IMG/VR virus record: IMGVR_UViG_3300033995_001164 | Location: 186,001 to 250,000 of that record | Strand: one strand, 5' to 3' | DNA: 64,000 nt | Part shown: positions 43,241 through 56,759 of the stretch, one piece after another | Numbering within the stretch: the stretch's first letter is position 1 | Layout: every line of letters starts with the position of its first letter | Notes under the pieces: generated by a model | The model's database searches: none | What the model was told of the DNA's origin: nothing | Seen by the model: only the letters and a program-made list of their open reading frames with translations | Made by a program: the position numbers and the translations under genes

Positions 43241-43316
43241 TTGATAAGGTGGGTTTCGAACCCACGGACTCTCGGCAGTTACCCACCGAGTGTTTCGCCA
43301 ACAAAACTTCTTACCA
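43241..43316 (-). ncRNA. tRNA-like RNA 1 with GNRA hairpin in place of the anticodon loop
   Basis: TGGTAAG/CTTATCA-A acceptor, GTTT/AAAC D-stem, GTGGG-TTCGAAA-CCCAC T-arm; central CTCGGTGG-GTAA-CTGCCGAG. Confidence 0.7.
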
Positions 43317-43327
43317 ATCCTTCCACC

Positions 43328-43528
43328 AATGAGATTATTTTGGTGTAGATGTCCACAGTTTTTCTATTCAAAACCCATCGCGTCTTACCGCTTAAAAGTC
43401 AACAACTACTCGGAGGGATTGTTGTCAGTTCCCTTTATTCCGACAGACCCCCTCTGTAAAACCGTATGAGGCGTCAGCTACATCATTATTTCGAACGATG
43501 CCAAATCATTGAGTATCTCTATCTCATT
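43328..43528 (-). ncRNA. Candidate structured RNA, 201 nt
   Basis: AATGAGAT/ATCTCATT closing helix and several internal hairpins; no ORF. Confidence 0.45.
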
Positions 43529-43531
43529 TGT

Positions 43532-43619
43532 TGTTAGAACAGGAATCGAACCCGTGCTCTGCCGAAGATACCCCACTTTCGTGAATCGACGACCAAATAC
43601 TACCACTATATCATCTAAC
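43532..43619 (-). ncRNA. tRNA-like RNA 2
   Basis: GTTAGA/TCTAAC-A acceptor, AGTGGTAG D-loop, ACGGG-TTCGATT-CCTGT T-arm; central GTCGA/TCGGC helix bearing TTCAC-GAAA-GTGGG. Confidence 0.6.
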
Positions 43620-43624
43620 AATTG

Positions 43625-43698
43625 AGGTTCCTGTCAGAATCGAACTGACTCTATTCGGGGTTACAAAACCCGTGCACCACCTTTTATGCGTAGGAACC
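43625..43698 (-). tRNA. Atypical tRNA, tentatively Thr (TGT)
   Basis: GGTTCCT/AGGAACC-T; CGGG-TTTTGTAAC-CCCG (U31.C39 mismatch); canonical T-arm. Confidence 0.55.
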
Positions 43699-43751
43699 CT
43701 GTTGCAGAGTATTTTTTTTAAGTAGAAGTCAACTCTGTCTCTTAAACTACT

Positions 43752-43811
43752 AAAAGAAACTGTCCAAGGTCTATCCTGCTTTCGCTGTCCAGATTTTTCT
43801 CTGTTTCTTTT
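43752..43811 (-). ncRNA. Candidate small structured RNA, 60 nt
   Basis: AAAAGAAAC/GTTTCTTTT closing helix; GC-GAAA-GC hairpin; TGGACAG occurs twice. Confidence 0.35.
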
Positions 43812-43812
43812 A

Positions 43813-43905
43813 ACATCATCACTTCGGCCACATTGGGAGAACCGCAGTTCCCACGTTGTTTAAGGAGGTAGTTTGGCGGTGTATCACACCGAGTTATGAT
43901 AATGT
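43813..43905 (-). ncRNA. Candidate structured RNA, 93 nt, with ACCTCCTTA loop
   Basis: 10-bp closing helix with two G.U pairs on the minus strand; CGGTG/CACCG and GGGAAC/GTTCTCC hairpins. Confidence 0.45.
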
Positions 43906-43910
43906 ATTTG

Positions 43911-43984
43911 TACCCCCGGTGAGAGTCGAACTCACAAAACTCTTCATCCTAAGTGAAGCGGCTTTCCCGTTTGCCCACGAGGGT
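43911..43984 (-). tRNA. tRNA-Leu (TAG) without long variable arm
   Basis: CTTCA-CTTAGGA-TGAAG; only 74 nt. Confidence 0.8.
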
Positions 43985-43991
43985 ATTATTG

Positions 43992-44064
43992 TATCCTTAT
44001 CGGGATTCGAACCCAAACGACAAATTTAGAAGATTTGTATGCCAATCCATTACATCATAAGGAC
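43992..44064 (-). tRNA. tRNA-Arg (TCT)
   Basis: CAAAT-CTTCTAA-ATTTG; cloverleaf intact. Confidence 0.9.
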
Positions 44065-44077
44065 GTTTTTTTTTTTG

Positions 44078-44151
44078 AGACGATAGTCGGTCTCGAACCG
44101 ACCTTATTCCACATTGGAAGTGTGGTGCCATACCTACTAGGCGATACCGTC
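44078..44151 (-). tRNA. tRNA-Gly (TCC)
   Basis: CCACA-CTTCCAA-TGTGG; U73. Confidence 0.92.
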
Positions 44152-44230
44152 ATTTTTTGGGTAGATTCAGACTAGTACTGTCTACCGGGACCTCAAGTTT
44201 GAATTTCTTCAGGGAATTGAGACACATTCG

Positions 44231-44302
44231 TAGCAGGTGCTGGATTCGAACCAACGACCTAGAGGTTATGAGCCTCCCGAGCTACCTCTGCTCTAACCTG
44301 CA
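44231..44302 (-). tRNA. Initiator tRNA-fMet (CAT)
   Basis: 1.72 mismatch, GAGC/GCTC D-stem, GGAGG-CTCATAA-CCTCT. Confidence 0.85.
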
Positions 44303-44318
44303 ATTTATTTGTTTTTAG

Positions 44319-44394
44319 TAGCGAAGTACAGGTACCGCCCCTGTCTTATGTCAAGTTTATGAGACTTGCGGAAACTCTATGCCCCCCACTCGCG
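44319..44394 (-). tRNA. Atypical CAT tRNA (fMet-like acceptor, non-canonical T-loop)
   Basis: CGCGAGT acceptor with a bulge and C1.U72; CAAGT-CTCATAA-ACTTG; ACAGG-GGCGGTA-CCTGT. Confidence 0.6.
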
Positions 44395-44410
44395 ATGTAT
44401 TATTTAATTG

Positions 44411-44486
44411 CGGTCCCGGAGGGTTTCGAACCCTCATTTTAGAGCAGTGACAGTGCAATTCCCCTACCAATGGGGCTCACAAGACC
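44411..44486 (-). tRNA. tRNA-Asp (GTC)
   Basis: GCA-CTGTCAC-TGC (weak stem); G73. Confidence 0.85.
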
Positions 44487-44586
44487 AAAATTTTCAATTC
44501 AAAGGTGACTATCCTATAACAATTGAAGGAGAAAGAACCGTGTTTCCCGGGTAGTGACTTCCCGTATTCTGTCTTTCTGTTTTTTG

Positions 44587-44660
44587 TGGAACTGACGGGG
44601 GTCGAACCCGCATACCTTCTCGTTGCAAACGAGCTATTCAGCCAATTGAACTACAGCCCC
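44587..44660 (-). tRNA. tRNA-Ala (TGC)
   Basis: G3.U70 pair; CTCG-TTTGCAA-CGAG. Confidence 0.92.
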
Positions 44661-44724
44661 AATTATTCGTCTTTCCGAATCGTCAACATTGTGTAATTAG
44701 GGGACACGTTGCTCATAACCCTTG

Positions 44725-44796
44725 TACTGCCACGGAGAATCGAACTCCGATTTTATGGATGAAAACCATATATCCTGACCGTTAGATGATGGCAGC
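44725..44796 (-). tRNA. tRNA-Glu (TTC)
   Basis: TATGG-TTTTCAT-CCATA. Confidence 0.92.
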
Positions 44797-44842
44797 TTAT
44801 GAATAACCAATATTTCAATTAACTTGTTTCTTTTTGATGGTA

Positions 44843-44873
44843 CAAAGATAATGCTTTATTTCATTCTACCAAA
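44843..44873 (-). promoter_or_regulatory. Bacteroidota sigma70-type promoter for the tRNA sub-operon
   Basis: Minus strand TTTG-GTAGAATGAAATAAAGCAT-TATCTTTG (19-nt spacer). Confidence 0.75.
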
Positions 44874-45102
44874 CTTTACTCTTCTTTTTTTTCTTCTTCG
44901 ACTAAAACATTTTTTAATCCGTAGGTTACTCCCAATATCGGTGAGTAATCCATAACCAACTCTTCTCTAATCATACCTGTTATTATTATTTTTAGTTATT
45001 GTATCAATATATTTTTTACCTGCGAGTATCAATACCAGTAAACATACCAACAATCCACCCATTATGACCAATATTTGTTCTCCTGTATATTCTTCCATAA
45101 CT

Positions 45103-45345
45103 TTAATTTGATTTTCTCCAATTATTGGTGTTATAAATACAAAATTGTGAACCCACTTGGGCGTTTCTCCAATCATTCGGGTATAGATAAAATAATTTAT
45201 CATCTCCGGTACATTCATTTCTAATTACAACAGAATAATCTCTCACTCTATTACTAATTACTAGCCCACAATTACAACTCACATATCCATCAACAGAACA
45301 AGATAAGAATAGTGGGATGGACATAATTAAAATTAATTTTTTCAT
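45103..45345 (-). CDS. Small putative lipoprotein
   Basis: MKKLILIMSIPLFLSC lipobox-like; promoter at 45363-45394. Confidence 0.6.
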   Translation of the reverse strand: MKKLILIMSIPLFLSCSVDGYVSCNCGLVISNRVRDYSVVIRNECTGDDKLFYLYPNDWRNAQVGSQFCIYNTNNWRKSN

Positions 45346-45599
45346 AATCCTTTTATTTGTTACAAAGGTAATACATTATTTCATTCTACCAAATAAAAAC
45401 AAAAAAAAAATCCACCTTTTTTGAAGATGGATTTTTAAATATTTTTTTTTACTTAAATATATATCATACCATCTCCTTCCAAGTCGTATCTCTACCCTCA
45501 GTTCCCGCTATCGTAAGTAATATGTTTAAAGTTTGCATTTTCTGTGTTATTGTAATTTCTAATAAATATACACCTTTTTATAAAAGTGTCAAGTATTAA

Positions 45600-45986
45600 T
45601 TATTTATTTTCTATAAGTTCATCTAAAACAGCCGGAATGTATTGTTTAAACAATTTAATTGCATTCATTTTAAGTTCAATCATTTCCTTAATATTGTCAG
45701 ATAATTTTTTAATCTTATCGTATTCATCCGGAGTTAATAAGAACACTTCTTTTGGTATAGTGTTATATGTCTTCCCTATAATTGGACTTGTTATTTCAAT
45801 AATATTGGTATCTCCATCGTAATAATACGGTGTTAACCCCTGAGACTTAAATTTAAGTAAACTCATTGGAGTTATATCAAAATCTAATATTTTTCTATTC
45901 TCCGGAAGTTTTGGTTTATCCATCATTTCTTTGTGTTGGTTTAATATATCGTCTTTTTCTTCTTCGGTAATTATAAATTTTCTCAT
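45600..45986 (-). CDS. Leader-bearing protein
   Basis: MRKFIITEEEKDDILNQHK; late-type motif upstream. Confidence 0.6.
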   Translation of the reverse strand: MRKFIITEEEKDDILNQHKEMMDKPKLPENRKILDFDITPMSLLKFKSQGLTPYYYDGDTNIIEITSPIIGKTYNTIPKEVFLLTPDEYDKIKKLSDNIKEMIELKMNAIKLFKQYIPAVLDELIENK

Positions 45987-46127
45987 ACTAATAAATATCT
46001 TAACATAATGAATTACTATTCAAATACATTTTTTTTTAAACCGGTATAGATAATATTGTTTTAACAATTATCGGAAATGGATAATTTCTTCGAGGTGAAG
46101 GTATTTTAATCATAAGTAATATTATTA

Positions 46128-46325
46128 AAAAAGTTTAACAACCCCGCCCTCGGGTCGTAGCGGGCTACATGGGAATTCCGGAATTCGTCGTGTTCGTCAC
46201 CGGCGTACTAGTCCTTATCTATCCTTTACCGTATTACTACGGTGCTACTATTGGGAGGTCACCCCTATCAACACGCTAGTCCATTAATTTTTTAGAGTAT
46301 GGACACCCCGGTTGTTAAACTTTTT
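46128..46325 (-). ncRNA. Candidate structured RNA, 198 nt, GC-rich
   Basis: Perfect 16-bp terminal inverted repeat AAAAAGTTTAACAACC/GGTTGTTAAACTTTTT; internal CCGTA-GTAA-TACGG, GTCCAT/ATGGAC and GTAGC/GCTAC hairpins. Confidence 0.55.
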
Positions 46326-46387
46326 ATTTACATTCACCGTATTTCTACGGCGATTATCGCCGGTATTCACCGTATCGATAAATTTTG

Positions 46388-46528
46388 TGGGTAACAGGGG
46401 ATTCGCACCGAGAGCCTTGACATATCTTTTTTTCTAGAAATATTACAATACATTGTACTCCAATTAACCTTATTCTCTGACACCACCCTCACCGAATGGC
46501 CCGATTCGCTACACCGGAAAGGTTACCC
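46388..46528 (-). ncRNA. tRNA-like RNA 3 (141 nt, weak T-arm)
   Basis: Perfect GGGTAAC/GTTACCC-A acceptor-like helix; GG-TGCGAAT-CC T-loop-like segment. Confidence 0.4.
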
Positions 46529-46536
46529 AAATAATT

Positions 46537-46687
46537 AAAAACAGACAGAATGATTCTCCGATATTTACGTCTTAGGGGACTAGACGGGCATCATACCCGT
46601 GTTTACCCTCGGCGGTCTCTTGGTTTGGTTGATTACTCCGAACCTCACATCCGTATTACCACTGACTTAAGTTATGTGTCTGTTTTT
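46537..46687 (-). ncRNA. Candidate structured RNA, 151 nt
   Basis: 11-bp AAAAACAGACA/TGTCTGTTTTT closing helix; GGGTA/TGCCC and CGTCT/AGACG hairpins. Confidence 0.5.
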
Positions 46688-46688
46688 G

Positions 46689-46855
46689 TGGAATATTTGG
46701 GATTCGAACCCATGCCTCGCACCGTCTGATGCTTGCACATCCTTATGTGCTTTTATCCCTTTTTTTTGTAAAACAACAGACGGCTTTGAAGTACATCCAC
46801 ACCAACAATTATGACCGACTTCACCTTATGTGGAAGTTTAGTTTTACAATATTTC
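46689..46855 (-). ncRNA. tRNA-like RNA 4 (167 nt)
   Basis: GAAATAT/ATATTCC-A acceptor; TGGG-TTCGAAT-CCCA T-arm; 7-bp CCGTCTG/CAGACGG helix enclosing a long insert. Confidence 0.6.
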
Positions 46856-46921
46856 TTCGGGAGAGACCCTCAAGGGGTCACCTAACGGAATTATACCCTT
46901 AAATCACTCTCCGTCTTCTTG

Positions 46922-46992
46922 CACGTTTGATAGGTCTCGAACCCATACAAATTCTTTTGGAGAGAATTATGCTACCATTACATCACAAACGT
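46922..46992 (-). tRNA. tRNA-Trp (CCA)
   Basis: ATTCT-CTCCAAA-AGAAT; G73. Confidence 0.92.
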
Positions 46993-46993
46993 A

Positions 46994-47641
46994 TTATTTT
47001 AACCATTTTCTAATGGCGTTATCACTAACACCATATTTACGACCTGTTCCTTTATACCCAAGATTAATTACATCTTGTTTTATTTGTTCTATGGATGGTC
47101 TCTCAACTTTTCTATTTTGTTTATTTGTACATTTGATACATTTATCACTTTTTTTATCTTTTGTACCACCACACTCACAATGGTATTTAATTTTATTAGA
47201 TTTCCCGGAATATGTGCTAGTTTGGGAGTGACAATTAGGACATAAAAATCTTAAATTTTCTATTCTATTGTCATTATTAACCCCATTAATATGGTCTAAA
47301 TGTAGGCTAATATTTTTACCATTCCATTCCCCATTATTGCCACATTCGACACATTTATACTCAAGTAAATTTTTCTTTAATATTCTATTTTTAATTTTAC
47401 CTCTCGCAAATGTTGAATCTTTAACAAAAACGTCCTCGTCTAATCTAACTTCTTTAGGTCCTGTACCATAATAATTATATTTAGGAATCTCTAAACCCAA
47501 TTTAATAATTCTGTCTTTAATATTTCTATAACCACCCGACCCATTTGGTGATAAATTAAATAATAAAATAACCTCTCTCATTGATTTTGAATTATTTAAT
47601 ATTTCAAATAATTCTTCTTTTGTTACAGTTTTTAAATTCAT
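46994..47641 (-). CDS. HNH homing endonuclease
   Basis: CVECG...LHLDHINGVNNDNRIENLRFLCPNCHSQT; same C-terminal YGVSDNAIRKW as 42276..43073. Confidence 0.9.
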   Translation of the reverse strand: MNLKTVTKEELFEILNNSKSMREVILLFNLSPNGSGGYRNIKDRIIKLGLEIPKYNYYGTGPKEVRLDEDVFVKDSTFARGKIKNRILKKNLLEYKCVECGNNGEWNGKNISLHLDHINGVNNDNRIENLRFLCPNCHSQTSTYSGKSNKIKYHCECGGTKDKKSDKCIKCTNKQNRKVERPSIEQIKQDVINLGYKGTGRKYGVSDNAIRKWLK

Positions 47642-47711
47642 ATACTTTATTTTAATATAAATATCTTAAAAAACTAAAAAGGGTCACCATAACCTATGTT
47701 TCACCAAAAAT

Positions 47712-47872
47712 AATAACATAATTTTTTGTAGTCCCCCGCCGGGTAACCCCCCTACTTTTTCACACAACCCGGATGCCTCCGAATCTAATTTTCTATTTCA
47801 CCTCTTACTAAGAAACGCGTTTTCCATTCAGAGATTCAAGCCGATTTTCGCGAGTTAAAAAACTATGTTATT
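47712..47872 (-). ncRNA. Candidate structured RNA, 161 nt
   Basis: 16-bp closing helix with one G.U pair on the minus strand; CCGGGT/ACCCGG and CGCG/CGCG helices. Confidence 0.5.
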
Positions 47873-47874
47873 TG

Positions 47875-47944
47875 AGGTCTCGGGGGGAATCGAACCCACT
47901 CTATTAGTTTTGCAGACTAACCGGTCGCCACGACCAACAAGACC
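47875..47944 (-). tRNA. tRNA-Cys (GCA)
   Basis: TTAGT-CTGCAAA-ACTAA; U73; short D-arm. Confidence 0.9.
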
Positions 47945-48017
47945 ATTTAACCTACGACCTAAAGAACAGGAATTGTATCCATATCATTCTATGAGCACTG
48001 TAGGTTTTCTATTTTAA

Positions 48018-48089
48018 AAAACACCCGGACTGACCTTTTCTCCCTTGTCTGTACGTGTTATCCGGCCGTGACTACGTAGCGGGTGTTTT
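48018..48089 (-). ncRNA. Candidate small structured RNA, 72 nt
   Basis: AAAACACCC/GGGTGTTTT closing helix and CCGGA/TCCGG. Confidence 0.35.
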
Positions 48090-48254
48090 AATAAATCACA
48101 CATCCATCAAGATTGGGATAATTAGAAGGGCTATTTATTTTCAAACTATTTCATTCCTCCCTAAAACTAACTTACTCAACAAACATAACACTTCTTGTAG
48201 TGTTACATTTTCTAACTTTAACGCTGTTTGTCTTTCTATGTGTAAATTTAATTT

Positions 48255-48641
48255 TTATGTGTCAATTCCAAAAAACTCCTTACCGGTTGATTCTTGTAAT
48301 CCATACATATATTCTTCCGCTTCTTCTTCAGAATCAAAATACGTGCTATGTGATGTCTTATCAGATAAATTAACGGTTATTTGAGATTTTTGTCGAATTT
48401 CTTTAGTTTCTTCATTGATAAGATACCATTTGTATTCACTTAAATATTCCGTAGTTCTTCGGTTTATTCCGGAATTATAATTACTCCACCCTTCAGGTGT
48501 TTCTTCTGTCATACCATACTTAATCCCTAAAAATGTTTTAGGTTTTGATGGTACTTTATCAAACCACTTATAACCTGTTTCTTTTTCCGGTTGGAAACTC
48601 ATTGACGCCACTCTATCTACTTGGAAATAATATCTACCCAT
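48255..48641 (-). CDS. Hypothetical protein
   Basis: 128-aa ORF. Confidence 0.55.
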   Translation of the reverse strand: MGRYYFQVDRVASMSFQPEKETGYKWFDKVPSKPKTFLGIKYGMTEETPEGWSNYNSGINRRTTEYLSEYKWYLINEETKEIRQKSQITVNLSDKTSHSTYFDSEEEAEEYMYGLQESTGKEFFGIDT

Positions 48642-48801
48642 ATTTGTTTATTTAATATCTTCTCTAAAATATGACATCTCAACATTGTATAATTCACAAA
48701 TTCTTTCTGTGGACATTTTGGAGAATAAACTTCCCAAACAATGGATAAAATATCCATCAATAAACCACTTTAATCTTTGTTTTGCTTCGTATTCTGTCAT
48801 C

Positions 48802-49044
48802 TTAATATCCTATTTCATCTTTAATCTTCCATTGTTCATCAATGGGGATTCTTTCAACCCTTTCAACCGGAACAAATCCGTCCAATCTTTTTTCTTTAAC
48901 ATCCTCAAAATGTTCAATGGTGTCCAAATAAAACCCGAACTGATATCGAATGTATTGGAACTTTTCACCATCCCAATATGCCATGTGGTTGTTTCTACAG
49001 AAACCATTATACCACCCTTCAACCATATCTTTTTTTAATATCAT
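48802..49044 (-). CDS. Hypothetical protein
   Basis: 80-aa ORF after host-type promoter (TACCTTTG near 49096-49103). Confidence 0.55.
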   Translation of the reverse strand: MILKKDMVEGWYNGFCRNNHMAYWDGEKFQYIRYQFGFYLDTIEHFEDVKEKRLDGFVPVERVERIPIDEQWKIKDEIGY

Positions 49045-49142: not shown

Positions 49143-49305
49143 TTATATAGGAAGTTTTACTTTACTTAAAATATTATTTGAAACGTGAGTATAAACTTTC
49201 TAAGAAAGGTTTAACATGCGATAAATAATTATTTCCAGTTTTAGGGGAGTAGTTCAGATATATAAACTTTTCTTCACAAATCTTTATAATTTTTTGGTTT
49301 TTCAT
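49143..49305 (-). pseudogene. Internally deleted tyrosine recombinase (integron-integrase-like)
   Basis: N-terminal MKNQKIIKICEEKFIYLNYSPKTGNNYLSHVKPFLESL (SAM-like YS..T...Y motif) is joined out of frame to C-terminal YTHVSNNILSKVKLPI (catalytic-Tyr motif). Confidence 0.75.
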
Positions 49306-49340
49306 AATATAACTTACTAATAATTAATGTTTTACACAAT

Positions 49341-49369
49341 ATTACATATATAACATAGTTATGTGTAAT
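49341..49369 (+). other. attI-like site
   Basis: GTTATGT core at 49358, just upstream of the integrase start; its flank is complementary to the R'' of the first attC. Confidence 0.55.
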
Positions 49370-49385
49370 AAAATAAAAATTATGA

Positions 49386-49598
49386 TTATCCTATATCACA
49401 TTTGGTTATTAATCCTTTATCAATCTCCAAGTTTATTCTATCAAATCGTAAATCCATTGTGATTACATAATTATTAGAATCTTCTCTTGTTATTCTAACT
49501 TTATAATCATTTTCTTTACATAATTCTGTTCCTGATTCTTTATTCATTCCGATTAAAGATTCTAATAATTCATTACTTCCGTTTCTATTTCGTCCCAT
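49386..49598 (-). CDS. Cassette 1 gene: peptidase-inhibitor I78/potato-inhibitor-like protein
   Basis: VITMDLRFDRINLEIDKGLITKCDIG matches the TMDyr.dR...D...I....G pattern. Confidence 0.6.
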   Translation of the reverse strand: MGRNRNGSNELLESLIGMNKESGTELCKENDYKVRITREDSNNYVITMDLRFDRINLEIDKGLITKCDIG

Positions 49599-49632
49599 AA
49601 TTTTAAATTTGTATAATTTTTATTTTACATAC

Positions 49633-49686
49633 ACATAACAAATGATAAACAACATTAAAACGATTGTTTATCATCGGACGTTATAA
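49633..49686 (+). mobile_element. attC site 1 (54 nt)
   Basis: ACATAAC-AA-ATGATAAAC-loop-GTTTATCAT-CGGAC-GTTATAA. Confidence 0.8.
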
Positions 49687-49701
49687 AACATTAAAACGAT
49701 T

Positions 49702-49831
49702 TTATAACAAAGTATAAAAGAAATGCTCCAAAAGTTCGACATTGGAAATCCTCTGTTACGGAGTTGAACCGCATCTACCTTGCAAGATAGTTGTTACACA
49801 ACCGCACTTCTTTTATACTCAATCGTTATGT
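49702..49831 (+). mobile_element. attC site 2 (130 nt), closing an ORF-less cassette
   Basis: TTATAAC-AA-AGTATAAAAGAA...TTCTTTTATACT-CAATC-GTTATGT. Confidence 0.8.
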
Positions 49832-49846
49832 TTAATTTTAAGAAAT

Positions 49847-50116
49847 TTATTTGTTTTTTAATTTGTCTTGAAGTATTTTGTTTACATCAAATTTAGTCCA
49901 AGAAGTTTGTTCTTCAAGTGGTTTTCGTTCTGTTGGTGGCGTTGGTACATCATCAATAACCATATAGTGACTAAATGTTAAATGAGACAAACTTCTTCCC
50001 ATTTGTCCTTTCAATTTACTTGGAAACATATGACCATTTGTTCTATTTACCCACCAACAAAATAATTCTTCATTTGGTAAATCTTGTTCTGAATTTATCT
50101 CTATCCATTCTTTCAT
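49847..50116 (-). CDS. Cassette 3 gene: DUF551-like hypothetical protein
   Basis: Likely start MKEWIEINSEQDLP; ends with SHYM...PTPP pattern. Confidence 0.5.
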   Translation of the reverse strand: MKEWIEINSEQDLPNEELFCWWVNRTNGHMFPSKLKGQMGRSLSHLTFSHYMVIDDVPTPPTERKPLEEQTSWTKFDVNKILQDKLKNK

Positions 50117-50155
50117 ATAATATATTTTTAAGTTGTATAAATTTTTTAAAACTAA

Positions 50156-50209
50156 ACATAACAAAGTGTAAAAAACATTAAAACAATTTTTTACACCCAA
50201 CCGTTATGT
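50156..50209 (+). mobile_element. attC site 3 (54 nt)
   Basis: ACATAAC-AAA-GTGTAAAAA-loop-TTTTTACAC-CCAACC-GTTATGT; loop nearly identical to attC1. Confidence 0.8.
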
Positions 50210-50226
50210 GTAATAAAAAACTAAAA

Positions 50227-50451
50227 TTAAACTACCTCAACTTTATACAGTGTTCTATTATCGAAGTTTTCTTTTGAAAACCCCTTTATTACATCATTAT
50301 TTTTGTGTGAAATTGTTTCAATGTCATCTATGTTGTTTTTGATGTCATTCAGTGTTTTACTCAATCTACTCCAGTAAATTTGTTCACACAAAAATAAACC
50401 AGTCCATTGTAGGTTTTTCAAAATAAAATCTGTTAATTTAGTTCGTTTCAT
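50227..50451 (-). CDS. Cassette 4 gene: hypothetical protein
   Basis: 74-aa ORF between attC3 and attC4. Confidence 0.55.
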   Translation of the reverse strand: MKRTKLTDFILKNLQWTGLFLCEQIYWSRLSKTLNDIKNNIDDIETISHKNNDVIKGFSKENFDNRTLYKVEVV

Positions 50452-50489
50452 ATATTTAAAAGTTTAATTTTTTTACGTTTTTTACATAC

Positions 50490-50512
50490 ACATAACAAGG
50501 TGTATATGTAAT
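50490..50512 (+). mobile_element. Truncated attC site 4 (left arm only)
   Basis: ACATAAC-AAGGTGTATA with no right arm; same upstream TTTACATACACATAACAA as attC1. Confidence 0.55.
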
Positions 50513-50517
50513 AATTT

Positions 50518-50703
50518 TTACAAAGATACGATTATATTCCTACTCCGGAGTGTTTTTCTTAAAAGAGATAATCTTTTTCTATGATTGACATATTGGTCAC
50601 CATCATTAGCTTTATGTCCTTTAAAAATTGATTCAGTTATCTCACATTCCAATTTAATAATTTCACTTATTAGCTCTTCTGTTGTTAAATCACTCTCAAT
50701 CAT
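50518..50703 (-). CDS. Hypothetical protein
   Basis: Coupled ORF. Confidence 0.5.
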   Translation of the reverse strand: MIESDLTTEELISEIIKLECEITESIFKGHKANDGDQYVNHRKRLSLLRKTLRSRNIIVSL

Positions 50704-51023
50704 ATTTTCTCAAATTCGTCTTCAAATCCGTACCATTCCTCACCTTCTTCATCTTCGTACCAATATGTGTATGCCCGGTCGTATTTATGCCAATCAATTC
50801 TAGTCAATTCAACCTCATTTCCACTATTTTTATCTCTAACCACATTACCAACTTGAAATGCTTGTGGTACGTAATCATTGATTGTTTCACTTTTAATAAT
50901 CAATTCTCCAACACTTTTAACCTCATCAGTTTGGATATTGGTATAGTTTCCTTCGGATGATAATTCCCACCCATTGTCATACAACCAATTCGTAAAATCT
51001 AAAATTTCGTTTTCTAATAACAT
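50700..51023 (-). CDS. Hypothetical protein
   Basis: ORF after a TATCTTTG promoter element near 51046-51053. Confidence 0.55.
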   Translation of the reverse strand: MLLENEILDFTNWLYDNGWELSSEGNYTNIQTDEVKSVGELIIKSETINDYVPQAFQVGNVVRDKNSGNEVELTRIDWHKYDRAYTYWYEDEEGEEWYGFEDEFEKI

Positions 51024-51063
51024 AATATATCAGTTTTTGTGGGGACAAAGATACTACGATTTT

Positions 51064-51339
51064 TTAATCTACCAAATTTTTATCTTTATTTTCCAAATAT
51101 TTTCTTGACTCACTACACATTTTTTCCAAAACCTCTAATGATTTGAGATTCTTAAAGATGATTGTTAGAATTTCCTCACTTTCACCACCTAACACATCAA
51201 CACCAACCTCATTCGGTTCTGACAATGAATCAATCGTAATGAATGGTAATTTAACACTGTTCTCAATTCCCATTCCAAATGATAATTCACCATCTCCGGC
51301 CACAATAACTCTCTCACGTTGTTTTTTTACTTCTGACAT
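51064..51339 (-). CDS. Hypothetical protein
   Basis: 91-aa ORF. Confidence 0.55.
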   Translation of the reverse strand: MSEVKKQRERVIVAGDGELSFGMGIENSVKLPFITIDSLSEPNEVGVDVLGGESEEILTIIFKNLKSLEVLEKMCSESRKYLENKDKNLVD

Positions 51340-51344
51340 AATAT

Positions 51345-52187
51345 TTAATTTTCTGTTTCTAATCTTTTAATAACGTCCTTAATATTAATATATGATGTTA
51401 AAATTGTTGGTAACCCAAGAAGAGCATTACAAAAATCAAACATATATCTATAAGTTGAGAATACACTTCCCACACTCACCTTATTGTACATTACGTAGTA
51501 TGTTAATAATGCTGTCACACTTCCATAAACAATACCTTGAATCCAAATTGAAAACTTAGCATCAATACTTGACATTTTAAGTGATAAGAACTGACCTCTC
51601 TTTAATAAATTATTAATTGAGGCAATTTTTCTTGTACCAATCACATCAGTTTGTTCTTCAGACAAATCATTATATTTACTTGTAATGTTGGCAATTTTTG
51701 GTGAATAATATGCTGTTGCCCCCAAGATTAATATTGTTGTAATAATCAAGAATCCAACAATCGGTAAACTTACCATTGCCAAGAAGTAGATGGCGCCAAC
51801 CAAACCAATAATCGTCTGTATTACCAATAACATATCTCGTTCAAAAAACAGGACAATATAGTGCATTAAGGTTAATCTTCCGTTGATTTTTGTTGTCTCA
51901 ACATCATTATCAAGTTGATTACTTGTTTCAATAGAGGCAAATCTCCTATAAATCCCGGAGAATACTTTAGTGTCATAAATTTTACTGATGTACCCGAAGA
52001 ACATAATTGATGCAAATGTAGAAACCAAATACCATATGTATGAATAATCTTTGGTAATTAAGTGGTCAATTGCATTACCCAAAACTTTGGGATACATAAC
52101 CATCAATATCGCATTAATCATGAACAATGAATATGAAAATATTATTGATTTCCAATTCTCACTAAACATTATTTTTAACTTATCCAT
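51345..52187 (-). CDS. ABC-transporter-type six-helix transmembrane domain, no ATPase
   Basis: Six hydrophobic helices; YPKVLGNAID, YDTKVFSGIY, GSVFSTYRYMFDF patterns. Confidence 0.7.
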   Translation of the reverse strand: MDKLKIMFSENWKSIIFSYSLFMINAILMVMYPKVLGNAIDHLITKDYSYIWYLVSTFASIMFFGYISKIYDTKVFSGIYRRFASIETSNQLDNDVETTKINGRLTLMHYIVLFFERDMLLVIQTIIGLVGAIYFLAMVSLPIVGFLIITTILILGATAYYSPKIANITSKYNDLSEEQTDVIGTRKIASINNLLKRGQFLSLKMSSIDAKFSIWIQGIVYGSVTALLTYYVMYNKVSVGSVFSTYRYMFDFCNALLGLPTILTSYINIKDVIKRLETEN

Positions 52188-52256
52188 ATCTTATCTTTTT
52201 TGATTTTGACAAAGATACAACTAAAATTTAATCTACCAAATAATTATGAATTTTCT

Positions 52257-52484
52257 TTAAATTGTTTTCCAAGTCTTTTTAATGGTTTTTGAAAAGTTAA
52301 CAATTTTTTGACAGTCTTCACAATTTACATTTTCATTTGTTTTTACAAATTGACCACAAGTCATAAAATCCCCATCAAGTGTTAAACCACATAAAGTGTA
52401 ATCACTTCCAACCGGTGATGTAAAATGAATTTCATTTTTGAATATATCATCACCATTACCAATGAATTTTATTTTATTTGACAT
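52257..52484 (-). CDS. Small Cys/His (zinc-finger-like) protein
   Basis: H...CG...C...CEDC spacing. Confidence 0.5.
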   Translation of the reverse strand: MSNKIKFIGNGDDIFKNEIHFTSPVGSDYTLCGLTLDGDFMTCGQFVKTNENVNCEDCQKIVNFSKTIKKTWKTI

Positions 52485-52687
52485 TATTCCTCACTTTTTT
52501 TAGGTCCCTTGAAATCACAATCAAGACAAACGTATCTCTGTTCTTCAATGCTCCAATCCATATTATAATGTTGACATTCCTTAGGTTTTAAATATTTTTG
52601 TTGTTTCTTGTATTCCGACACCACTTTAAGTGCTGTTTTATACTGACTTTCTGTTATCATAGTTAAAAGAATAAGTAGGGTCTCCAT
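52484..52687 (-). CDS. Small zinc-ribbon protein
   Basis: ECQH...YVCLDC. Confidence 0.45.
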   Translation of the reverse strand: METLLILLTMITESQYKTALKVVSEYKKQQKYLKPKECQHYNMDWSIEEQRYVCLDCDFKGPKKSEE

Positions 52688-53172
52688 TCATCAGGGATTT
52701 CGTGATGAACTTGTTTCATTAACATCAAGTAATGAGGTCTCCTTGGTTGAGGAATTTCCTTACCGTATTCCTCCAACGTCAAATTGGACTTCTCACCGTT
52801 ACACCTTCTACAAGCGGTAACTAAGTTGTCCCAACTGTCTTTCCCCCCCTTAGATTGGGGTATTACGTGGTCCAAAGTTAGCGTCTTTCTATTATTGTCT
52901 CCACAATATACACACTCAAAGTTATCTCTACGATAAACATTCTCTCTACTTAAAGGAACTTTTTGAATTATCTGATTCACATATTTGTAGACCCGAATAA
53001 TTGAAGGTTTTTTGATATCCAATTCAGGATTCACTAATTTGAATGATTCCGGATGTTCATTTATAACGTCAGCATTACCCTTATAAGAAATGACGAAAGC
53101 CCTCTCTGTGGAAATAATACTCCTCGCCATAAAACTTGAATCCAAAACCAAAGTTTTTTGGTAACTACTCAC
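52663..53172 (-). CDS. HNH endonuclease (McrA-like)
   Basis: RENVYRRDNFECVYCG...TLDHVIPQSKGGKDSWDNLVTACRRCNGEK. Confidence 0.9.
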   Translation of the reverse strand: MSSYQKTLVLDSSFMARSIISTERAFVISYKGNADVINEHPESFKLVNPELDIKKPSIIRVYKYVNQIIQKVPLSRENVYRRDNFECVYCGDNNRKTLTLDHVIPQSKGGKDSWDNLVTACRRCNGEKSNLTLEEYGKEIPQPRRPHYLMLMKQVHHEIPDEWRPYLFF

Positions 53173-53206
53173 GACTATTAATTTTTAATTAAACATTTTT
53201 TTTTTG

Positions 53207-53277
53207 TTCCCCCAAATGGTACTGGCCCATTTTCCCGATATTAAAAGTATCGTGCTTCACCTTAAAGCTTTAGGGGA
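53207..53277 (-). tRNA. tRNA-Lys (TTT), non-canonical T-loop
   Basis: CGATA-CTTTTAA-TATCG; AATGG-GCCAGTA-CCATT. Confidence 0.8.
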
Positions 53278-53360
53278 TTATTGAGCTCATTTTGTTTTGT
53301 TATTCGGCTCAAAATATAAGTAATTTGAGATTAATAATCAAACTTTATGAGCCACATTTG

Positions 53361-53433
53361 TCGGTCAGGTGGGTATCGAACCCACTACCTTTCGCGTATC
53401 AGGCGAATGCTCTACCGATTGAGCTACTGACCG
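53361..53433 (-). tRNA. tRNA-Ile (GAT)
   Basis: TTCGC-CTGATAC-GCGAA. Confidence 0.95.
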
Positions 53434-53438
53434 AATTG

Positions 53439-53510
53439 TTAGGGTGGAGAGGGTCGAACTCTCCGCTTCCTGCCTCCAATGCAGGCTTCTCACCCCGAGA
53501 ATACACCCTA
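53439..53510 (-). tRNA. tRNA-Pro (TGG)
   Basis: CCTGC-ATTGGAG-GCAGG. Confidence 0.88.
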
Positions 53511-53524
53511 ATATATTTTTTTTG

Positions 53525-53609
53525 TAGAGAATATGGGATTCGAACCCATACCCCCATTTAAGGAGGGACACATTAGCAGTGTGTTCTGATACCGTTACAG
53601 CAATTCTCT
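53525..53609 (-). tRNA. tRNA-Ser (GCT)
   Basis: ACACA-CTGCTAA-TGTGT; long variable arm. Confidence 0.9.
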
Positions 53610-54389
53610 TTTTGAATAATTAACAATAAATTCTGATTTACCTGTTTCAGTTATTTCTTCGTGTATTTCACAATGACAATTACTACAAACCAAAACACAT
53701 TTATCAACCTCTTTTTTCATTTTTTCTTCTGAATAATTTTTACCCCCTATAGTAAAATCTTTTTCATCAGGATTGATATGGTGAAATTGTAAGGCGTTCA
53801 TAGATTTACTATAACCACATCTCTGACAACAACCACCTTTATACTCAACTAATCTTTTTTTTCTATTTTTACGACATCTAACTACGTGTTCAACAGAACT
53901 TTTCCTACGTTCAATCGCGGTTTGAGTTTTGACCTCAACAATACTACTAATAATCTTTCTACCAACTCCTAATATTTCACTAACTTTTCGGATGCTACCA
54001 ATTTTGTCATATAATTCTTTTATTTTTTTTATAAAATCCTCATCTTTAAATCTTAATTCATTTTTATTTTTATTAAGATTAAAAATTTTACAAATTCTGA
54101 TTACTTTATCTTGACTAATATTAACTTGGGGAAAAATACTTTTATATGTTTCACCATTTTGTTTTAAATTAATAATTTTATCAATTACCGATTTGTCAAT
54201 TAGTTTTAAAAAATCTTCATCATTTATTGTTGTTGTTTTATAATTTTCGTGAACACCTCCCATACCATTTTTATTAATATGATATGAAATAACACCGACG
54301 CTACAACCCAATATATTTTTAATATTTGTAATACTATATCCTTCTAACCTCAATTTTAATATTGAATCTTTTAATTTTTCTGTTTCCAT
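53595..54389 (-). CDS. HNH-type homing endonuclease with multiple HTH-like segments
   Basis: GGCCQRCGY...LQFHHINPDEKDF...EVDKCVLVCSNCHCEIH; stop codon lies inside tRNA-Ser. Confidence 0.85.
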   Translation of the reverse strand: METEKLKDSILKLRLEGYSITNIKNILGCSVGVISYHINKNGMGGVHENYKTTTINDEDFLKLIDKSVIDKIINLKQNGETYKSIFPQVNISQDKVIRICKIFNLNKNKNELRFKDEDFIKKIKELYDKIGSIRKVSEILGVGRKIISSIVEVKTQTAIERRKSSVEHVVRCRKNRKKRLVEYKGGCCQRCGYSKSMNALQFHHINPDEKDFTIGGKNYSEEKMKKEVDKCVLVCSNCHCEIHEEITETGKSEFIVNYSKRELL

Positions 54390-54449
54390 TTACTTAATTT
54401 GTTTATTAATAAATATATCAAAAATATTGAAAAGTTCAAGTTTTTTTTG

Positions 54450-54522
54450 TGTCCCCAAGAGGATTCGAACCCCTATTCTATCTGTCGTAAAGATAAGTCC
54501 TTTCCAGTTGAACGATGGAGAC
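54450..54522 (-). tRNA. tRNA-Arg (ACG)
   Basis: TATCT-TTACGAC-AGATA. Confidence 0.9.
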
Positions 54523-54579
54523 AATTTGATGTCTTTCCATCAGTCATCCCTATTATTTGGTAAGGGTGGAACATCCTTG

Positions 54580-54722
54580 TGGTCAGGACAGGTCTCGAAC
54601 CTGTACGATTGAAAAGACCAATTTTACTCGGTTCTTCGGGATGGTCAACATATTTAATGTGATGTCTCACGGCCCGATTAATCAATCACCCATTACGCGT
54701 CTACCAATTCCGCCACCTGACC
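54580..54722 (-). ncRNA. tRNA-like RNA 5 (143 nt, Leu-type D-arm)
   Basis: GGTCAGG/CCTGACC-A; TGGCGGAATTGGTAGACGC; ACAGG-TTCGAGA-CCTGT; about 90-nt insert with no 7-nt anticodon loop. Confidence 0.75.
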
Positions 54723-54726
54723 AATT

Positions 54727-54825
54727 TGAGGTTGAGAATTCCTCTGTGTCATAGAGAACTTATACTCTAGTTTTTAGTACCCCTCATCTCACAACGGTTT
54801 GCGTACCGTATCGGGAATAACACAT
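54727..54825 (-). ncRNA. Pseudoknotted RNA motif, copy A
   Basis: Shares ends and an internal GTGAGAT with copy B; P1 TGTGTTA/TGACACA; 3' hairpin GAGG-AATTCTCAA-CCTC. Confidence 0.6.
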
Positions 54826-54829
54826 TTCG

Positions 54830-54967
54830 AATTAAAGGTAGGACTCGAACCTACGACCTGATTTCCTTTTCCACTTAGTTCGGTATTGGATGTGACTCCG
54901 TCCCTTATTCGTTGTTTTTCTCTTTCGAGTTAGGTATGTCTGTTCTAACCAACTGAACTACTTTAAT
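54830..54967 (-). ncRNA. tRNA-like RNA 6 (138 nt)
   Basis: ATTAAAG/CTTTAAT; TAGTTCAGTTGGTTAGAACA D-arm; AGGTC-GTAGG-TTCGAGT-CCTAC; about 80-nt purine-rich insert replaces the anticodon arm. Confidence 0.75.
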
Positions 54968-56709: not shown

Positions 56710-56759
56710 ATTTTTCTTACCAATATGTCAAATAACTAATTCCTTTATTTTTGATGGGA

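What the first reader, a model, noticed from the sequence alone, without database searches (positions are those of the whole stretch)
43241..54967. A family of anticodon-less tRNA mimics co-transcribed with real tRNAs
Seen: six RNAs (43241, 43532, 46388, 46689, 54580, 54830) keep a 7-bp acceptor helix, a discriminator and a T-arm, and four also keep a D-arm. The anticodon arm is replaced by unrelated structures of about 20-100 nt. They sit in tRNA-like spacing, so RNase P and 3' processing should release them (inference). Keeping the elbow while varying the insert suggests the tRNA body is a stabilising scaffold for functional RNA modules. Possible roles: decoys for anticodon nucleases or tRNA-sensing defences, aptamers, or RelA/ribosome ligands. 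No group I core or BHB motif was seen, so they are not obviously intron-containing tRNAs.
Basis: partly seen in the sequence, partly recalled or inferred. Interest (0 to 1): 0.85.

Follow-up and report, generated by a model that had tools for sequence, protein, structure and literature searches.

The report
Anticodon-less tRNA-shaped RNAs in phage
A large T4-like phage carries, among its real tRNA genes, several conserved tRNA-shaped RNAs that have no anticodon, and one of them belongs to a virus-only family found in more than a hundred phage contigs, so phages appear to use the tRNA body for something other than decoding.

Summary
The observation largely holds. On the minus strand, four elements (43241, 43531, 54580, 54830) have a 7-bp acceptor helix, D arm, T arm and discriminator, but no anticodon arm. 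A fifth (46689) is a compact 71-nt version. The sixth (46388) is a conserved RNA closed by an acceptor-like helix, with only a T-loop-like sequence. These are not decayed tRNAs as a class. The 76-nt element keeps 24/24 pairs across six variants, 16 with double changes. Its anticodon arm is always an 8-bp stem with a tetraloop. The 71-nt element covaries and keeps G3.U70 plus A73 in all eight variants. The 143-nt element has a tRNA-Leu-type body. That body occurs in over 100 viral stretches (73 distinct elements, 79-184 nt, none a credible tRNA-Leu). Its 26-mer was found once in 185,579 bacterial and archaeal genomes. Inserts are almost all unrelated, yet covary within subfamilies. No intron signature was found. 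The closest known thing is T4 species 1 RNA. Function is unproven. I favour non-decoding small RNAs matured like tRNAs, with the body serving as processing and stability handle. Being charged (Leu/Ala identity) is a serious rival. Element 54830 has no relatives and may be a dying tRNA.

The parts
43241..43316 (-). c1: a 76-nt tRNA-like RNA. It has a 7-bp acceptor helix, a 4-bp D arm and a 5-bp T arm with loop TTCGAAA. The anticodon arm is replaced by an 8-bp stem (with a tandem U.G/G.U) capped by a GUAA tetraloop. The discriminator is A.
   Evidence: Six variants in IMG/VR keep 100% of 24 pairs, 16 of them with changes on both sides.
43531..43620 (-). c2: a 90-nt tRNA-like RNA with acceptor, D and T arms intact. 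A 39-nt arm ending in a 5-bp stem with a GAAA tetraloop replaces the anticodon arm.
   Evidence: Rfam tRNA 37.3 bits with a 35-nt local insert. In the homologue in L169 the body and flanks are identical, while the arm has diverged but still ends in a 5-bp stem with a GUGA loop.
46388..46529 (-). c3: a conserved RNA of about 141 nt, closed by an 8-bp acceptor-like helix followed by A and then CAAAA. It has a D-arm-like hairpin and a T-loop-like sequence (GGTGCGAATCC) but no canonical T stem.
   Evidence: It is 83-94% identical in four lineages. One compensatory pair lies in the closing helix and two in an internal hairpin. There is no Rfam hit.
46689..46759 (-). c4: a 71-nt compact tRNA-like RNA. 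It has a 6-bp acceptor helix with G3.U70 and A73, a 6-bp hairpin (AAGG loop) in the D-arm position, a 5-bp hairpin with an invariant AGAC loop in the anticodon-arm position, and a T arm.
   Evidence: Across eight variants 99.4% of cells are paired and 5 pairs have double changes. G3.U70 and A73 are invariant, and one variant encodes CCA.
54580..54722 (-). c5: a 143-nt member of a virus-restricted tRNA-Leu-type family. The body reads GGTCAGG-TG-GCGGAATTGGTAGACGC ... ACAGGTTCGAGACCTGT-CCTGACC-A. It carries a 92-nt insert where the anticodon and variable arms would be.
   Evidence: The same insert occurs in three metagenome contigs; two have unrelated flanks and one (L171) keeps the window's leader hairpin and the following tRNA.
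54830..54967 (-). c6: a 138-nt tRNA-like RNA with acceptor (ATTAAAG/CTTTAAT), D and T arms intact. It carries an A-rich insert of about 80 nt, and the discriminator is U.
   Evidence: Rfam tRNA 43.0 bits with a 77-nt insert. It has no stable fold (z = +0.89). It is found only in contigs of the same phage.
54728..54744 (-). Leader hairpin GAGGAATTCTCAACCTC, 5 nt upstream of c5.
   Evidence: Read from the sequence. The same hairpin precedes c6 and precedes Leu-type elements in other phages (L081, L171).
54971..54987 (-). Leader hairpin GAGGAGTTCTCAACCTC, 3 nt upstream of c6.
   Evidence: Read from the sequence.
44829..44876 (-). Promoter-like repeat (TTTG, 19 nt, TAnnTTTG) upstream of tRNA-Glu. 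It is the likely start of the unit that contains c2 and c1.
   Evidence: Repeat families D1 and D2. No terminator-like site lies on the minus strand between here and 41581-41558. The match to a Bacteroidota promoter type rests on my own knowledge.
56746..56793 (-). Promoter-like repeat of the same type upstream of tRNA-Ser(UGA). It is the likely start of the unit that contains c6 and c5.

Best explanation
These are genuine, selected, non-decoding small RNAs derived from tRNA genes. They are transcribed within or beside the phage's tRNA arrays.

Proposed mechanism, inferred rather than shown: the retained acceptor helix, D/T elbow, discriminator and the tRNA-like C-A-rich 3' trailer let the host tRNA machinery cut them out. 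That machinery is RNase P at the 5' end, and 3' trimming followed by CCA addition at the 3' end. The compact tRNA body then protects them from decay.

The anticodon arm has been rebuilt into something that cannot read a codon. In c1 and c2 it is a GNRA-capped helix, in c4 a short AGAC-loop hairpin, and in c5, c6 and c3 a longer structured insert. I take this rebuilt arm to be the working part presented by the body. It most plausibly binds or titrates a host or phage factor during infection. That would explain why one body carries many unrelated inserts across phages.

The six elements are several independent lineages, not one family.
For: Body intact, anticodon absent.

Selection on RNA structure:
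- c1 keeps 24/24 pairs in six variants. Sixteen pairs changed on both sides, and 0 of 500 shuffles reached this.
- c4 is 99.4% paired with 5 double-changed pairs.
- c3 has compensatory pairs in the closing helix and in a hairpin.

Selection on the rebuilt arm itself:
- The c1 hairpin (YTCGGTGG-GNAA-CTGCCGAR) is the most conserved part, while all three body stems are rewritten.
- The AGAC loop of c4 is invariant over a covarying stem.
- The c2 tip stays a 5-bp stem with a GNRA loop while the rest of the arm diverges.
- The c5 insert is 96% identical in four contexts; two have unrelated flanks and one keeps the window's leader hairpin and the following tRNA. It shows a G.U to U.G swap.

Scaffold behaviour of the Leu-type body:
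- There are 73 distinct elements of 79-184 nt, and none is a credible tRNA-Leu.
- The T-arm sequence is conserved even though it was not part of the search pattern.
- 55 inserts fall into 48 unrelated groups.
- Inserts fold better than shuffles (mean z = -1.06) and covary inside subfamilies.

Link to tRNA operons:
- Neighbouring tRNAs are on the same strand in 94 of 94 cases.
- Mimics and real tRNAs share the same C-A-rich 3' trailer.

Precedent: RNase P processes non-tRNA substrates that have tRNA-like features (PMC11143913).
Against: - There are no expression, end-mapping or binding data of any kind.
- c6 has no relatives and no stable fold. c2 and c5 as whole molecules are not more stable than shuffles.
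- Most Leu-type inserts are singletons, so their diversity could be neutral drift in an unconstrained arm rather than diverse modules.
- No protein gene travels with the Leu-type elements, and no antisense target was found in the window.
- The whole tRNA region, spacers included, is unusually conserved among relatives. It also holds four HNH endonuclease genes. Co-conversion by homing could therefore inflate plain sequence conservation, although it does not explain the compensatory changes.
Confidence: 0.55

Rival explanations
1. The function lies in the body, not the insert. On this view the RNAs are chargeable but non-decoding tRNA bodies. Host LeuRS charges the c5 family and host AlaRS charges c4. 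The charged RNAs then act as amino-acid carriers for a non-ribosomal transferase, or as sponges for a synthetase, EF-Tu or a defence factor that senses or attacks the tRNA acceptor end. The anticodon arm is simply released from constraint.
For: - The two best-defined bodies belong to two of the three systems that, from my own knowledge, do not read the anticodon (Ala, Leu and Ser). The review supports this for Ala and Leu.
- The c5 family keeps U8, A14, G18G19 and, in 60 of 73 elements, A73. For E. coli tRNA-Leu, identity is essentially A73 and A14, and the anticodon arm is dispensable for aminoacylation (PMC9976931).
- c4 keeps G1-C72, G2-C71, G3.U70 and A73 in all eight variants. These are the bacterial Ala determinants (PMC9976931).
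- The Leu-type body is nearly invariant in sequence across phages that share no neighbouring proteins. That is more than a generic processing handle would need.
- Inserts are mostly unrelated to each other.
Against: - The discriminator is G or U in 13 of 73 Leu-type elements.
- The c1 family changes acceptor stem and discriminator freely, and G3.U70 occurs only in the window's copy.
- Some inserts are clearly conserved.
- No tRNA-dependent transferase or other partner gene was seen in the window or next to the elements.
Confidence: 0.22
2. They are decaying tRNA genes. Their anticodon arms were wrecked by insertions, imprecise intron loss or endonuclease-driven repair in a region full of homing endonucleases. 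On this view they have no function of their own.
For: - Four HNH endonuclease ORFs lie inside the tRNA region.
- c6 is unique to this phage, A-rich and unstructured.
- A cultured Cellulophaga phage carries a 'tRNA-Pseudo' with an unpaired anticodon stem.
- Most Leu-type inserts are singletons.
Against: - Pseudogenes do not keep 24 of 24 pairs through 16 double changes. They also do not keep an identical body in more than 70 distinct elements from unrelated phages.
- The rebuilt arms of c1, c4 and c5 are themselves conserved.

This reading remains reasonable for c6 alone, at roughly 0.4 for that element.
Confidence: 0.1
3. They are intron-containing tRNA genes, and splicing restores normal tRNAs.
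For: - Rfam's tRNA model spans c6 and c2 with one large local insert at the anticodon arm.
- ARAGORN in intron mode returns a solution for four of the six.
- No tRNA-Lys was detected in this window.
Against: - No group I or other intron family matches at E<=1.
- The inserts (20-92 nt) are far below the size of self-splicing introns (my own knowledge).
- The ARAGORN solutions need a 3-nt 'intron', an A34 Asp anticodon, C33, or mismatched stems. They also duplicate tRNAs already present.
- c1 and c4 have no room for an anticodon loop, and their hairpins covary as hairpins.
- The shortest Leu-type inserts (28-31 nt) cannot hold an anticodon arm, a long variable arm and an intron together.
Confidence: 0.03
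4. The conserved sequences matter mainly as DNA. They would be recognition or recombination sites for homing endonucleases that spread the tRNA region between co-infecting phages.
For: - T4 SegB, encoded inside the T4 tRNA cluster, recognises a site that includes a conserved tRNA motif and drives inheritance of the tRNA region (PMC2330249).
- HNH genes lie in this region.
- Spacers as well as genes are highly conserved.
Against: - Compensatory changes that preserve base pairing point to selection on RNA.
- Leu-type elements also occur away from tRNA clusters, and no endonuclease family is shared among their neighbours.
Confidence: 0.05

Closest known systems
Phage T4 species 1 RNA (rnaC) and species 2 RNA (rnaD)
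   Same: These are small stable RNAs of unknown function encoded inside the tRNA gene cluster of a T4-type phage, next to a homing endonuclease gene. rnaC is 139 nt. It carries a canonical T arm (CCGGGTTCGAATCCCGG) next to an imperfect terminal helix, with a large structured insert (z = -4.6). The window's phage has T4-type capsid, portal and terminase genes.
   Different: No sequence similarity was seen, and none of the window's elements matched T4. T4 rnaC has a mismatched terminal helix and no D arm, whereas four of the window's elements keep a full body. T4 has two such RNAs. This phage clade has many lineages, one of which is spread across over 100 viral stretches.
Engineered 'tRNA scaffold' for recombinant RNA expression (anticodon arm replaced by a cargo RNA)
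   Same: The architecture is the same as in c2, c5 and c6: an intact acceptor, D and T body with a foreign structured RNA in place of the anticodon arm. In the engineered system the body is what gives processing and stability. This comparison rests on my own knowledge, not on anything tested here.
   Different: The scaffold is a laboratory construct. Here the arrangement is natural, conserved and diversified.
Other natural tRNA-like non-coding RNAs: mascRNA from MALAT1, gammaherpesvirus tRNA-miRNA hybrids, bacterial YrlA (Y RNA), the tmRNA tRNA-like domain, and Bacillus cereus tRNA-Other
   Same: All are tRNA mimics that use tRNA-processing or tRNA-binding proteins without decoding (PMC4201824 and PMC3399842, from the abstracts; the rest from my own knowledge). 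c4 shares G3.U70 and A73 with tmRNA.
   Different: - There is no credible Rfam match to mascRNA, Y RNA or tmRNA at these loci.
- In YrlA the tRNA-like module is permuted and works with Ro, and no Ro gene was seen.
- tmRNA has pseudoknots and a tag reading frame, and the phage has its own tmRNA elsewhere.
- The eukaryotic examples use RNase Z and Pol III contexts.
Group I intron-containing tRNA-Leu(UAA) and other bacterial or phage intron tRNAs
   Same: An insertion sits at the anticodon arm of a tRNA body, and homing endonuclease genes lie nearby.
   Different: There is no intron core. The inserts are 20-92 nt. No anticodon arm is restored by excision.

Membership tests
Canonical tRNA (Rfam RF00005) | 7-bp acceptor helix with an unpaired discriminator | tested here: met
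   c1, c2, c5 and c6 have 7 of 7 pairs. c3 has 8 bp. c4 has 6 bp plus an A.A mismatch.
Canonical tRNA (Rfam RF00005) | T arm: a 5-bp stem with a 7-nt TTCRANN loop directly stacked on the acceptor helix | tested here: met
   Met for c1, c2, c5 and c6. c4 has 4 bp. c3 has only the loop-like sequence GGTGCGAATCC and no stem.
Canonical tRNA (Rfam RF00005) | Anticodon arm: a 5-bp stem and a 7-nt loop with U33 and a 3-nt anticodon | tested here: not met
   No element has it. c1 has an 8-bp stem with a 4-nt loop, c4 a 5-bp stem with a 4-nt loop, and the others have 35-92-nt replacements. ARAGORN finds no anticodon except a 4-base call for c1.
Canonical tRNA (Rfam RF00005) | Score at or above the family's gathering score (29 bits) | tested here: inconclusive
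   c6 scores 43.0 and c2 scores 37.3, both only by skipping the insert. c4 scores 22.8. c1 gets only 18.9 bits to tRNA-Sec. c5 and c3 have no hit.
Group I intron-containing tRNA | Match to the group I intron core (Rfam Intron_gpI), or an insert of self-splicing size | tested here: not met
   No intron family matched at E<=1 in 41000-58000. The inserts are 20-92 nt.
Group I intron-containing tRNA | Excision restores a normal anticodon stem-loop with a sensible anticodon | tested here: not met
   ARAGORN -i returns Val(AAC) with a 3-nt intron, Asp(AUC), His(GUG) with a mismatched stem, and Leu(UAA) with C33 and a mismatch. It returns nothing for c3 and c4.
Archaeal or eukaryal BHB-intron tRNA | Bulge-helix-bulge motif at the exon-intron junctions, and a splicing endonuclease in the host | not tested
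   No dedicated BHB search was run. The promoter motifs suggest a bacterial (Bacteroidota) host, and such hosts lack this enzyme (my own knowledge).
tmRNA | tRNA-like domain with G3.U70, plus pseudoknots and a tag-peptide reading frame | tested here: not met
   c4 has G3.U70 and A73 but is only 71 nt with two short hairpins. Rfam tmRNA matches only 32102-32514 on the plus strand.
T4 species 1 RNA type (stable tRNA-like RNA in a phage tRNA cluster) | Encoded within a phage tRNA cluster on the tRNA strand, with a T arm and a terminal helix but no anticodon | tested here: met
   The window's elements are documented. T4 rnaC is documented.
T4 species 1 RNA type (stable tRNA-like RNA in a phage tRNA cluster) | Sequence or model-level homology to T4 rnaC | not tested
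   No covariance model of rnaC was built. Megablast of the window's region 43000-48000 against phage records found only a tRNA-Glu match in Cellulophaga phages. I treat rnaC as an analogue, not a relative.
T4 species 1 RNA type (stable tRNA-like RNA in a phage tRNA cluster) | Accumulates as a stable, processed RNA during infection | not testable with these tools
   This is shown for T4 RNAC and RNAD by northern blot (PMC9697503). No transcript data exist for this phage.
Y RNA / YrlA | Ro-binding helix formed by the 5' and 3' ends, with a Ro (TROVE) gene nearby | tested here: not met
   Here the ends form the acceptor helix. There is no Y_RNA hit. No TROVE domain was found among the 27 ORFs scanned against Pfam.

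The most novel reading that the evidence does not exclude
Phages, mostly uncultured and some probably infecting Bacteroidota, maintain a virus-only superfamily of tRNA bodies that can still be recognised by the tRNA machinery. Some may be charged, since Leu-type and Ala-type identity sets are kept. None can decode. The bodies serve as a natural display platform on which rapidly diversifying RNA arms are presented. This would be an RNA-level arms-race toolkit (sponges, decoys or carriers) embedded in tRNA operons. T4 species 1 RNA would be the long-unexplained first example.
Probability: 0.3. Interest if true: 0.9.

Novelty: new variant of a known kind. Interest (0 to 1): 0.72.

Why it matters
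Phage tRNA clusters are usually read as codon-usage or anti-defence supplements, and odd members are dismissed as 'pseudo-tRNAs'.

Three results here argue against that reading:
- Several such members are under clear structural selection.
- One tRNA-Leu-type body is shared by more than a hundred viral stretches, yet its 26-mer is essentially absent from 185,579 bacterial and archaeal genomes.
- That one body carries dozens of unrelated, structured inserts.

This gives a concrete and testable handle on a 50-year-old loose end, the function of T4 species 1 and 2 RNAs. It suggests that non-decoding uses of the tRNA fold are common in phages. It also offers natural examples of the tRNA-scaffold principle used in RNA engineering. 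If the Ala-type and Leu-type bodies are charged, it would add a new class of aminoacyl carriers outside translation.

Tried and rejected
1. Intron reading. The Rfam scan at E<=1 found no intron family, and ARAGORN -i gave only forced solutions. Rejected.
2. Known RNA families. No Rfam family other than tRNA matches any element.
3. Alanine identity for c1. G3.U70 is present only in the window's copy and becomes G-C in a close variant. Rejected for c1 and kept for c4.
4. The Leu-type body as a copy of a host tRNA-Leu. The 26-mer occurs once in 185,579 genomes, and that hit is itself an insert-bearing element. Cultured phages match only through the generic tRNA-Leu D arm. Rejected.
5. Guilt by association. 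Clustering ORFs within 4 kb of 63 Leu-type elements gave no family shared by more than 4 loci. Small ORFs in the window's tRNA region have no Pfam or PHROG function apart from the HNH domains.
6. Antisense targets of the inserts within the window. Only chance-level matches of 12-13 nt were found.
7. GNRA enrichment in Leu-type inserts. Eleven were observed against 7.6 +/- 2.6 expected, which is not significant.
8. Bacteroidota-type promoter directly upstream of stand-alone Leu-type elements. It was present in only 5 of 63, so host assignment of the wider family stays open.
9. Relatives of c6. None were found beyond the same phage.
10. Literature searches for a prior description found nothing specific.

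Full report
**Setting**

The window is part of a 309-kb uncultured phage contig (IMGVR_UViG_3300033995_001164, identical over the loci fetched). It has T4-type major capsid, portal (with an intein) and large terminase genes.

All tRNA genes lie on the minus strand. ARAGORN finds 23. Rfam adds tRNA-Thr(UGU) at 43625-43698, a third CAU tRNA at 41695-41767 and tRNA-Val(UAC) at 56251-56321. A tmRNA lies at 32102-32514 on the plus strand.

A repeated motif reads, on the minus strand, TTTG, about 19 nt, then TAnnTTTG. It precedes tRNA-Glu (44876-44829), tRNA-Ser(UGA) (56793-56746) and several ORFs. From my own knowledge this is the Bacteroidota housekeeping promoter type, so the host is probably in that phylum. 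Four ORFs with HNH endonuclease domains sit among the tRNAs.

**The observation**

Four of the six elements are just as described.

- c1 (43241-43316) folds into a clean cloverleaf (z = -3.7). Its anticodon arm is an 8-bp stem capped by GUAA.
- c2 (43531-43620) and c6 (54830-54967) pass the Rfam tRNA gathering score only because the model skips 35 and 77 nt at the anticodon arm.
- c5 (54580-54722) has a perfect acceptor helix, a D arm identical to that of enterobacterial tRNA-Leu, and a canonical T arm, with 92 nt in between.
- c4 (46689-46759) is a compact 71-nt version with a 6-bp acceptor helix, two short hairpins and a 4-bp T stem.
- c3 (46388-46529) is a conserved RNA closed by an 8-bp helix. 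Its 'T arm' is only a T-loop-like sequence.

A simple scan for a T arm followed by an acceptor strand with a complementary 7-mer upstream finds such elements only in the tRNA region.

**Are they real?**

Relatives were fetched through a neighbouring protein (21 loci at 64-100% amino-acid identity) and through DNA patterns.

- *c1.* Six variants exist. The acceptor, D and T stems are rewritten wholesale, yet every one of 144 cells is paired. Sixteen of 24 pairs changed on both sides, and no shuffle reached this. The rebuilt arm is the most conserved part. It is always an 8-bp stem with a tetraloop (GUAA, GAAA or GAGG), and its top pairs covary.
- *c4.* Eight variants exist. The AGAC-loop hairpin covaries strongly, and single compensatory changes occur in the acceptor and T stems.
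- *c3.* It is 83-94% identical in four lineages, with compensatory pairs in the closing helix and in one hairpin.
- *c2.* A relative (L169) has an identical body and flanks, but its 39-nt arm has diverged. The arm still ends in a 5-bp stem with a GNRA loop, GAAA having become GUGA.
- *c6.* It has no relatives outside the same phage and no stable fold.

**The Leu-type family**

- About 100 of these are full elements, and 73 are distinct, at 79-184 nt.
- The T arm was not in the search pattern, yet it is ACAGGTTCGAATCCTGT or a compensated variant.
- None of the 73 is a credible tRNA-Leu.
- A stricter 26-mer is present in 18 of the 73. It occurs once in 185,579 bacterial and archaeal genomes, and that single hit is itself an insert-bearing element.
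- The inserts are nearly all unrelated: 55 parsed inserts fall into 48 BLAST groups. They fold somewhat better than shuffles (mean z = -1.06). Within the few multi-member groups, compensatory changes are plain.
- The window's own c5 insert recurs at 96% identity in three metagenome contigs. Two of them have unrelated flanks, and the third keeps the window's leader hairpin and the following tRNA.
- The elements share no neighbouring protein family.
- Where tRNAs are nearby, they are on the same strand in 94 of 94 cases. However, 41 of 63 elements have none within 1.5 kb.
- Relatives of the window's phage carry further lineages. One is a 93-nt RNA with two T arms, and others measure 99-160 nt. 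They often sit in the same slot between tRNA-Thr and tRNA-Leu(UAA).

**What they are not**

- No intron family matches.
- ARAGORN's intron mode yields only implausible tRNAs.
- The shortest inserts cannot hold the missing arms plus an intron.
- No Rfam family other than tRNA matches.

**How they most likely work**

What is shown: a conserved tRNA body, no anticodon, selection on pairing, and selection on several rebuilt arms.

What is inferred: they are transcribed with or like tRNAs. The strand, the spacing, the promoter-like motifs, the absence of terminator-like sites between promoter and element and the shared C-A-rich 3' trailer all point that way. They would then be released by RNase P and 3' maturation, as other tRNA-like substrates are (PMC11143913). 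The body would stabilise them, and the rebuilt arm would do the work.

I put 0.55 on this. The main rival (0.22) is that the body is the working part because it can still be charged.

- The Leu-type body keeps U8, A14, G18G19 and mostly A73. Leucine identity in E. coli rests on A73 and A14, and the anticodon arm is dispensable for charging (PMC9976931).
- c4 keeps the bacterial alanine set G2-C71, G3.U70 and A73 in every variant.
- It is notable that the two best-defined bodies come from systems that ignore the anticodon.
- Against this rival, 13 of 73 Leu-type elements have G or U at position 73, and c1 changes its acceptor stem and discriminator freely.

Decay, splicing and a purely DNA-level role get low weight overall. 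Decay is a fair reading for c6 alone.

**A caveat on conservation**

The spacers between tRNAs are also strongly conserved among relatives, and homing endonucleases could spread whole tracts, as T4 SegB does (PMC2330249). I therefore rest the case on compensatory changes, not on identity alone.

**Comparison with what is known**

The nearest precedent is T4 species 1 RNA (rnaC). It is a 139-nt stable RNA of unknown function in the T4 tRNA cluster, and here it is seen to carry a canonical T arm beside an imperfect terminal helix. I treat it as an analogue, because no homology was tested or seen.

The architecture equals the engineered tRNA scaffold. It also recalls mascRNA, herpesvirus tRNA-miRNA hybrids, YrlA and the tmRNA tRNA-like domain, but the defining features of those families are not met (see the membership table).

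A cultured Cellulophaga phage has a 'tRNA-Pseudo' of this kind and two unannotated T-arm elements next to its tRNA cluster. So annotation pipelines have seen such genes without anyone studying them. Searches of the held literature found no description of these families.

**Verdict**

It is a new variant of a known kind (phage tRNA-like stable RNAs). The mechanism is untested.

Noticed in passing
window 43806-43909 (-): The roughly 100 nt directly after tRNA-Leu(UAG) form a conserved structured RNA. It has a 10-bp closing stem and inner hairpins. It is 96-100% identical in relatives and about 72% identical in more distant phages, with six covarying pairs, and it has no Rfam match. In relatives, tRNA-like elements are inserted between it and a second conserved block (43699-43751).
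   Followed up: partly
window 41500-57100 (-), spacers between tRNAs: Most inter-tRNA spacers are as conserved among relatives as the tRNAs, or more so. Examples are 44487-44585 (96-98%), 56526-56625 (94-96%) and 46532-46688 (96%). The tRNA region therefore looks like a dense array of conserved non-coding RNAs, or like a tract homogenised by homing.
   Followed up: partly
window 44665-44680 (-) and 54527-54542 (-): Small leader hairpins (a 5-bp stem, a GAAAGA loop, then the return stem) end 4 nt before the 5' ends of tRNA-Ala and tRNA-Arg(ACG). The stems covary (ATTCG/CGAAT versus TGATG/CATCA). The same motif precedes Leu-type elements in other phages. They may be processing or protein-binding signals.
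   Followed up: partly
window 32102-32514 (+): The phage encodes a tmRNA (Rfam 50.6 bits against a gathering score of 47) with an unusual T loop. ARAGORN does not detect it.
   Followed up: partly
window 41695-41767 (-) and 56251-56321 (-): Two apparently functional tRNAs (anticodons CAU and UAC) have non-standard T loops (ATCGTAA and AGCGTAA). ARAGORN misses them and Rfam finds them. No tRNA-Lys was found in the window.
   Followed up: partly
window 43910-43984 (-): tRNA-Leu(UAG) is only 75 nt long and lacks the long variable arm expected of bacterial-type tRNA-Leu.
   Followed up: no
window 42276-43073, 46994-47641, 52663-53172, 53595-54389 (all -): Four free-standing ORFs with HNH endonuclease domains, some also with helix-turn-helix domains, are interspersed with the tRNAs. 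Two of them share a conserved 3' end (repeat D10).
   Followed up: partly
window 16751-19567 (-): The T4-type portal protein gene carries an intein splicing domain.
   Followed up: no
L006:15652-15744, L011:14569-14661, L012:20481-20573: Relatives carry a 93-nt RNA with an acceptor helix and two T-arm-like hairpins around a conserved GGAAGGTC linker. It is conserved with compensatory changes between distant relatives and is absent from the window.
   Followed up: partly
L170 (Cellulophaga phage phi4:1, NC_021788) 5175-5291 and 5294-5435 (-): Two unannotated elements of 117 and 142 nt, each with a T arm and a 7-bp terminal helix, lie 3 nt apart just downstream of the tRNA cluster of a cultured phage. 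They sit next to a 'tRNA-Pseudo' whose anticodon stem is unpaired.
   Followed up: partly
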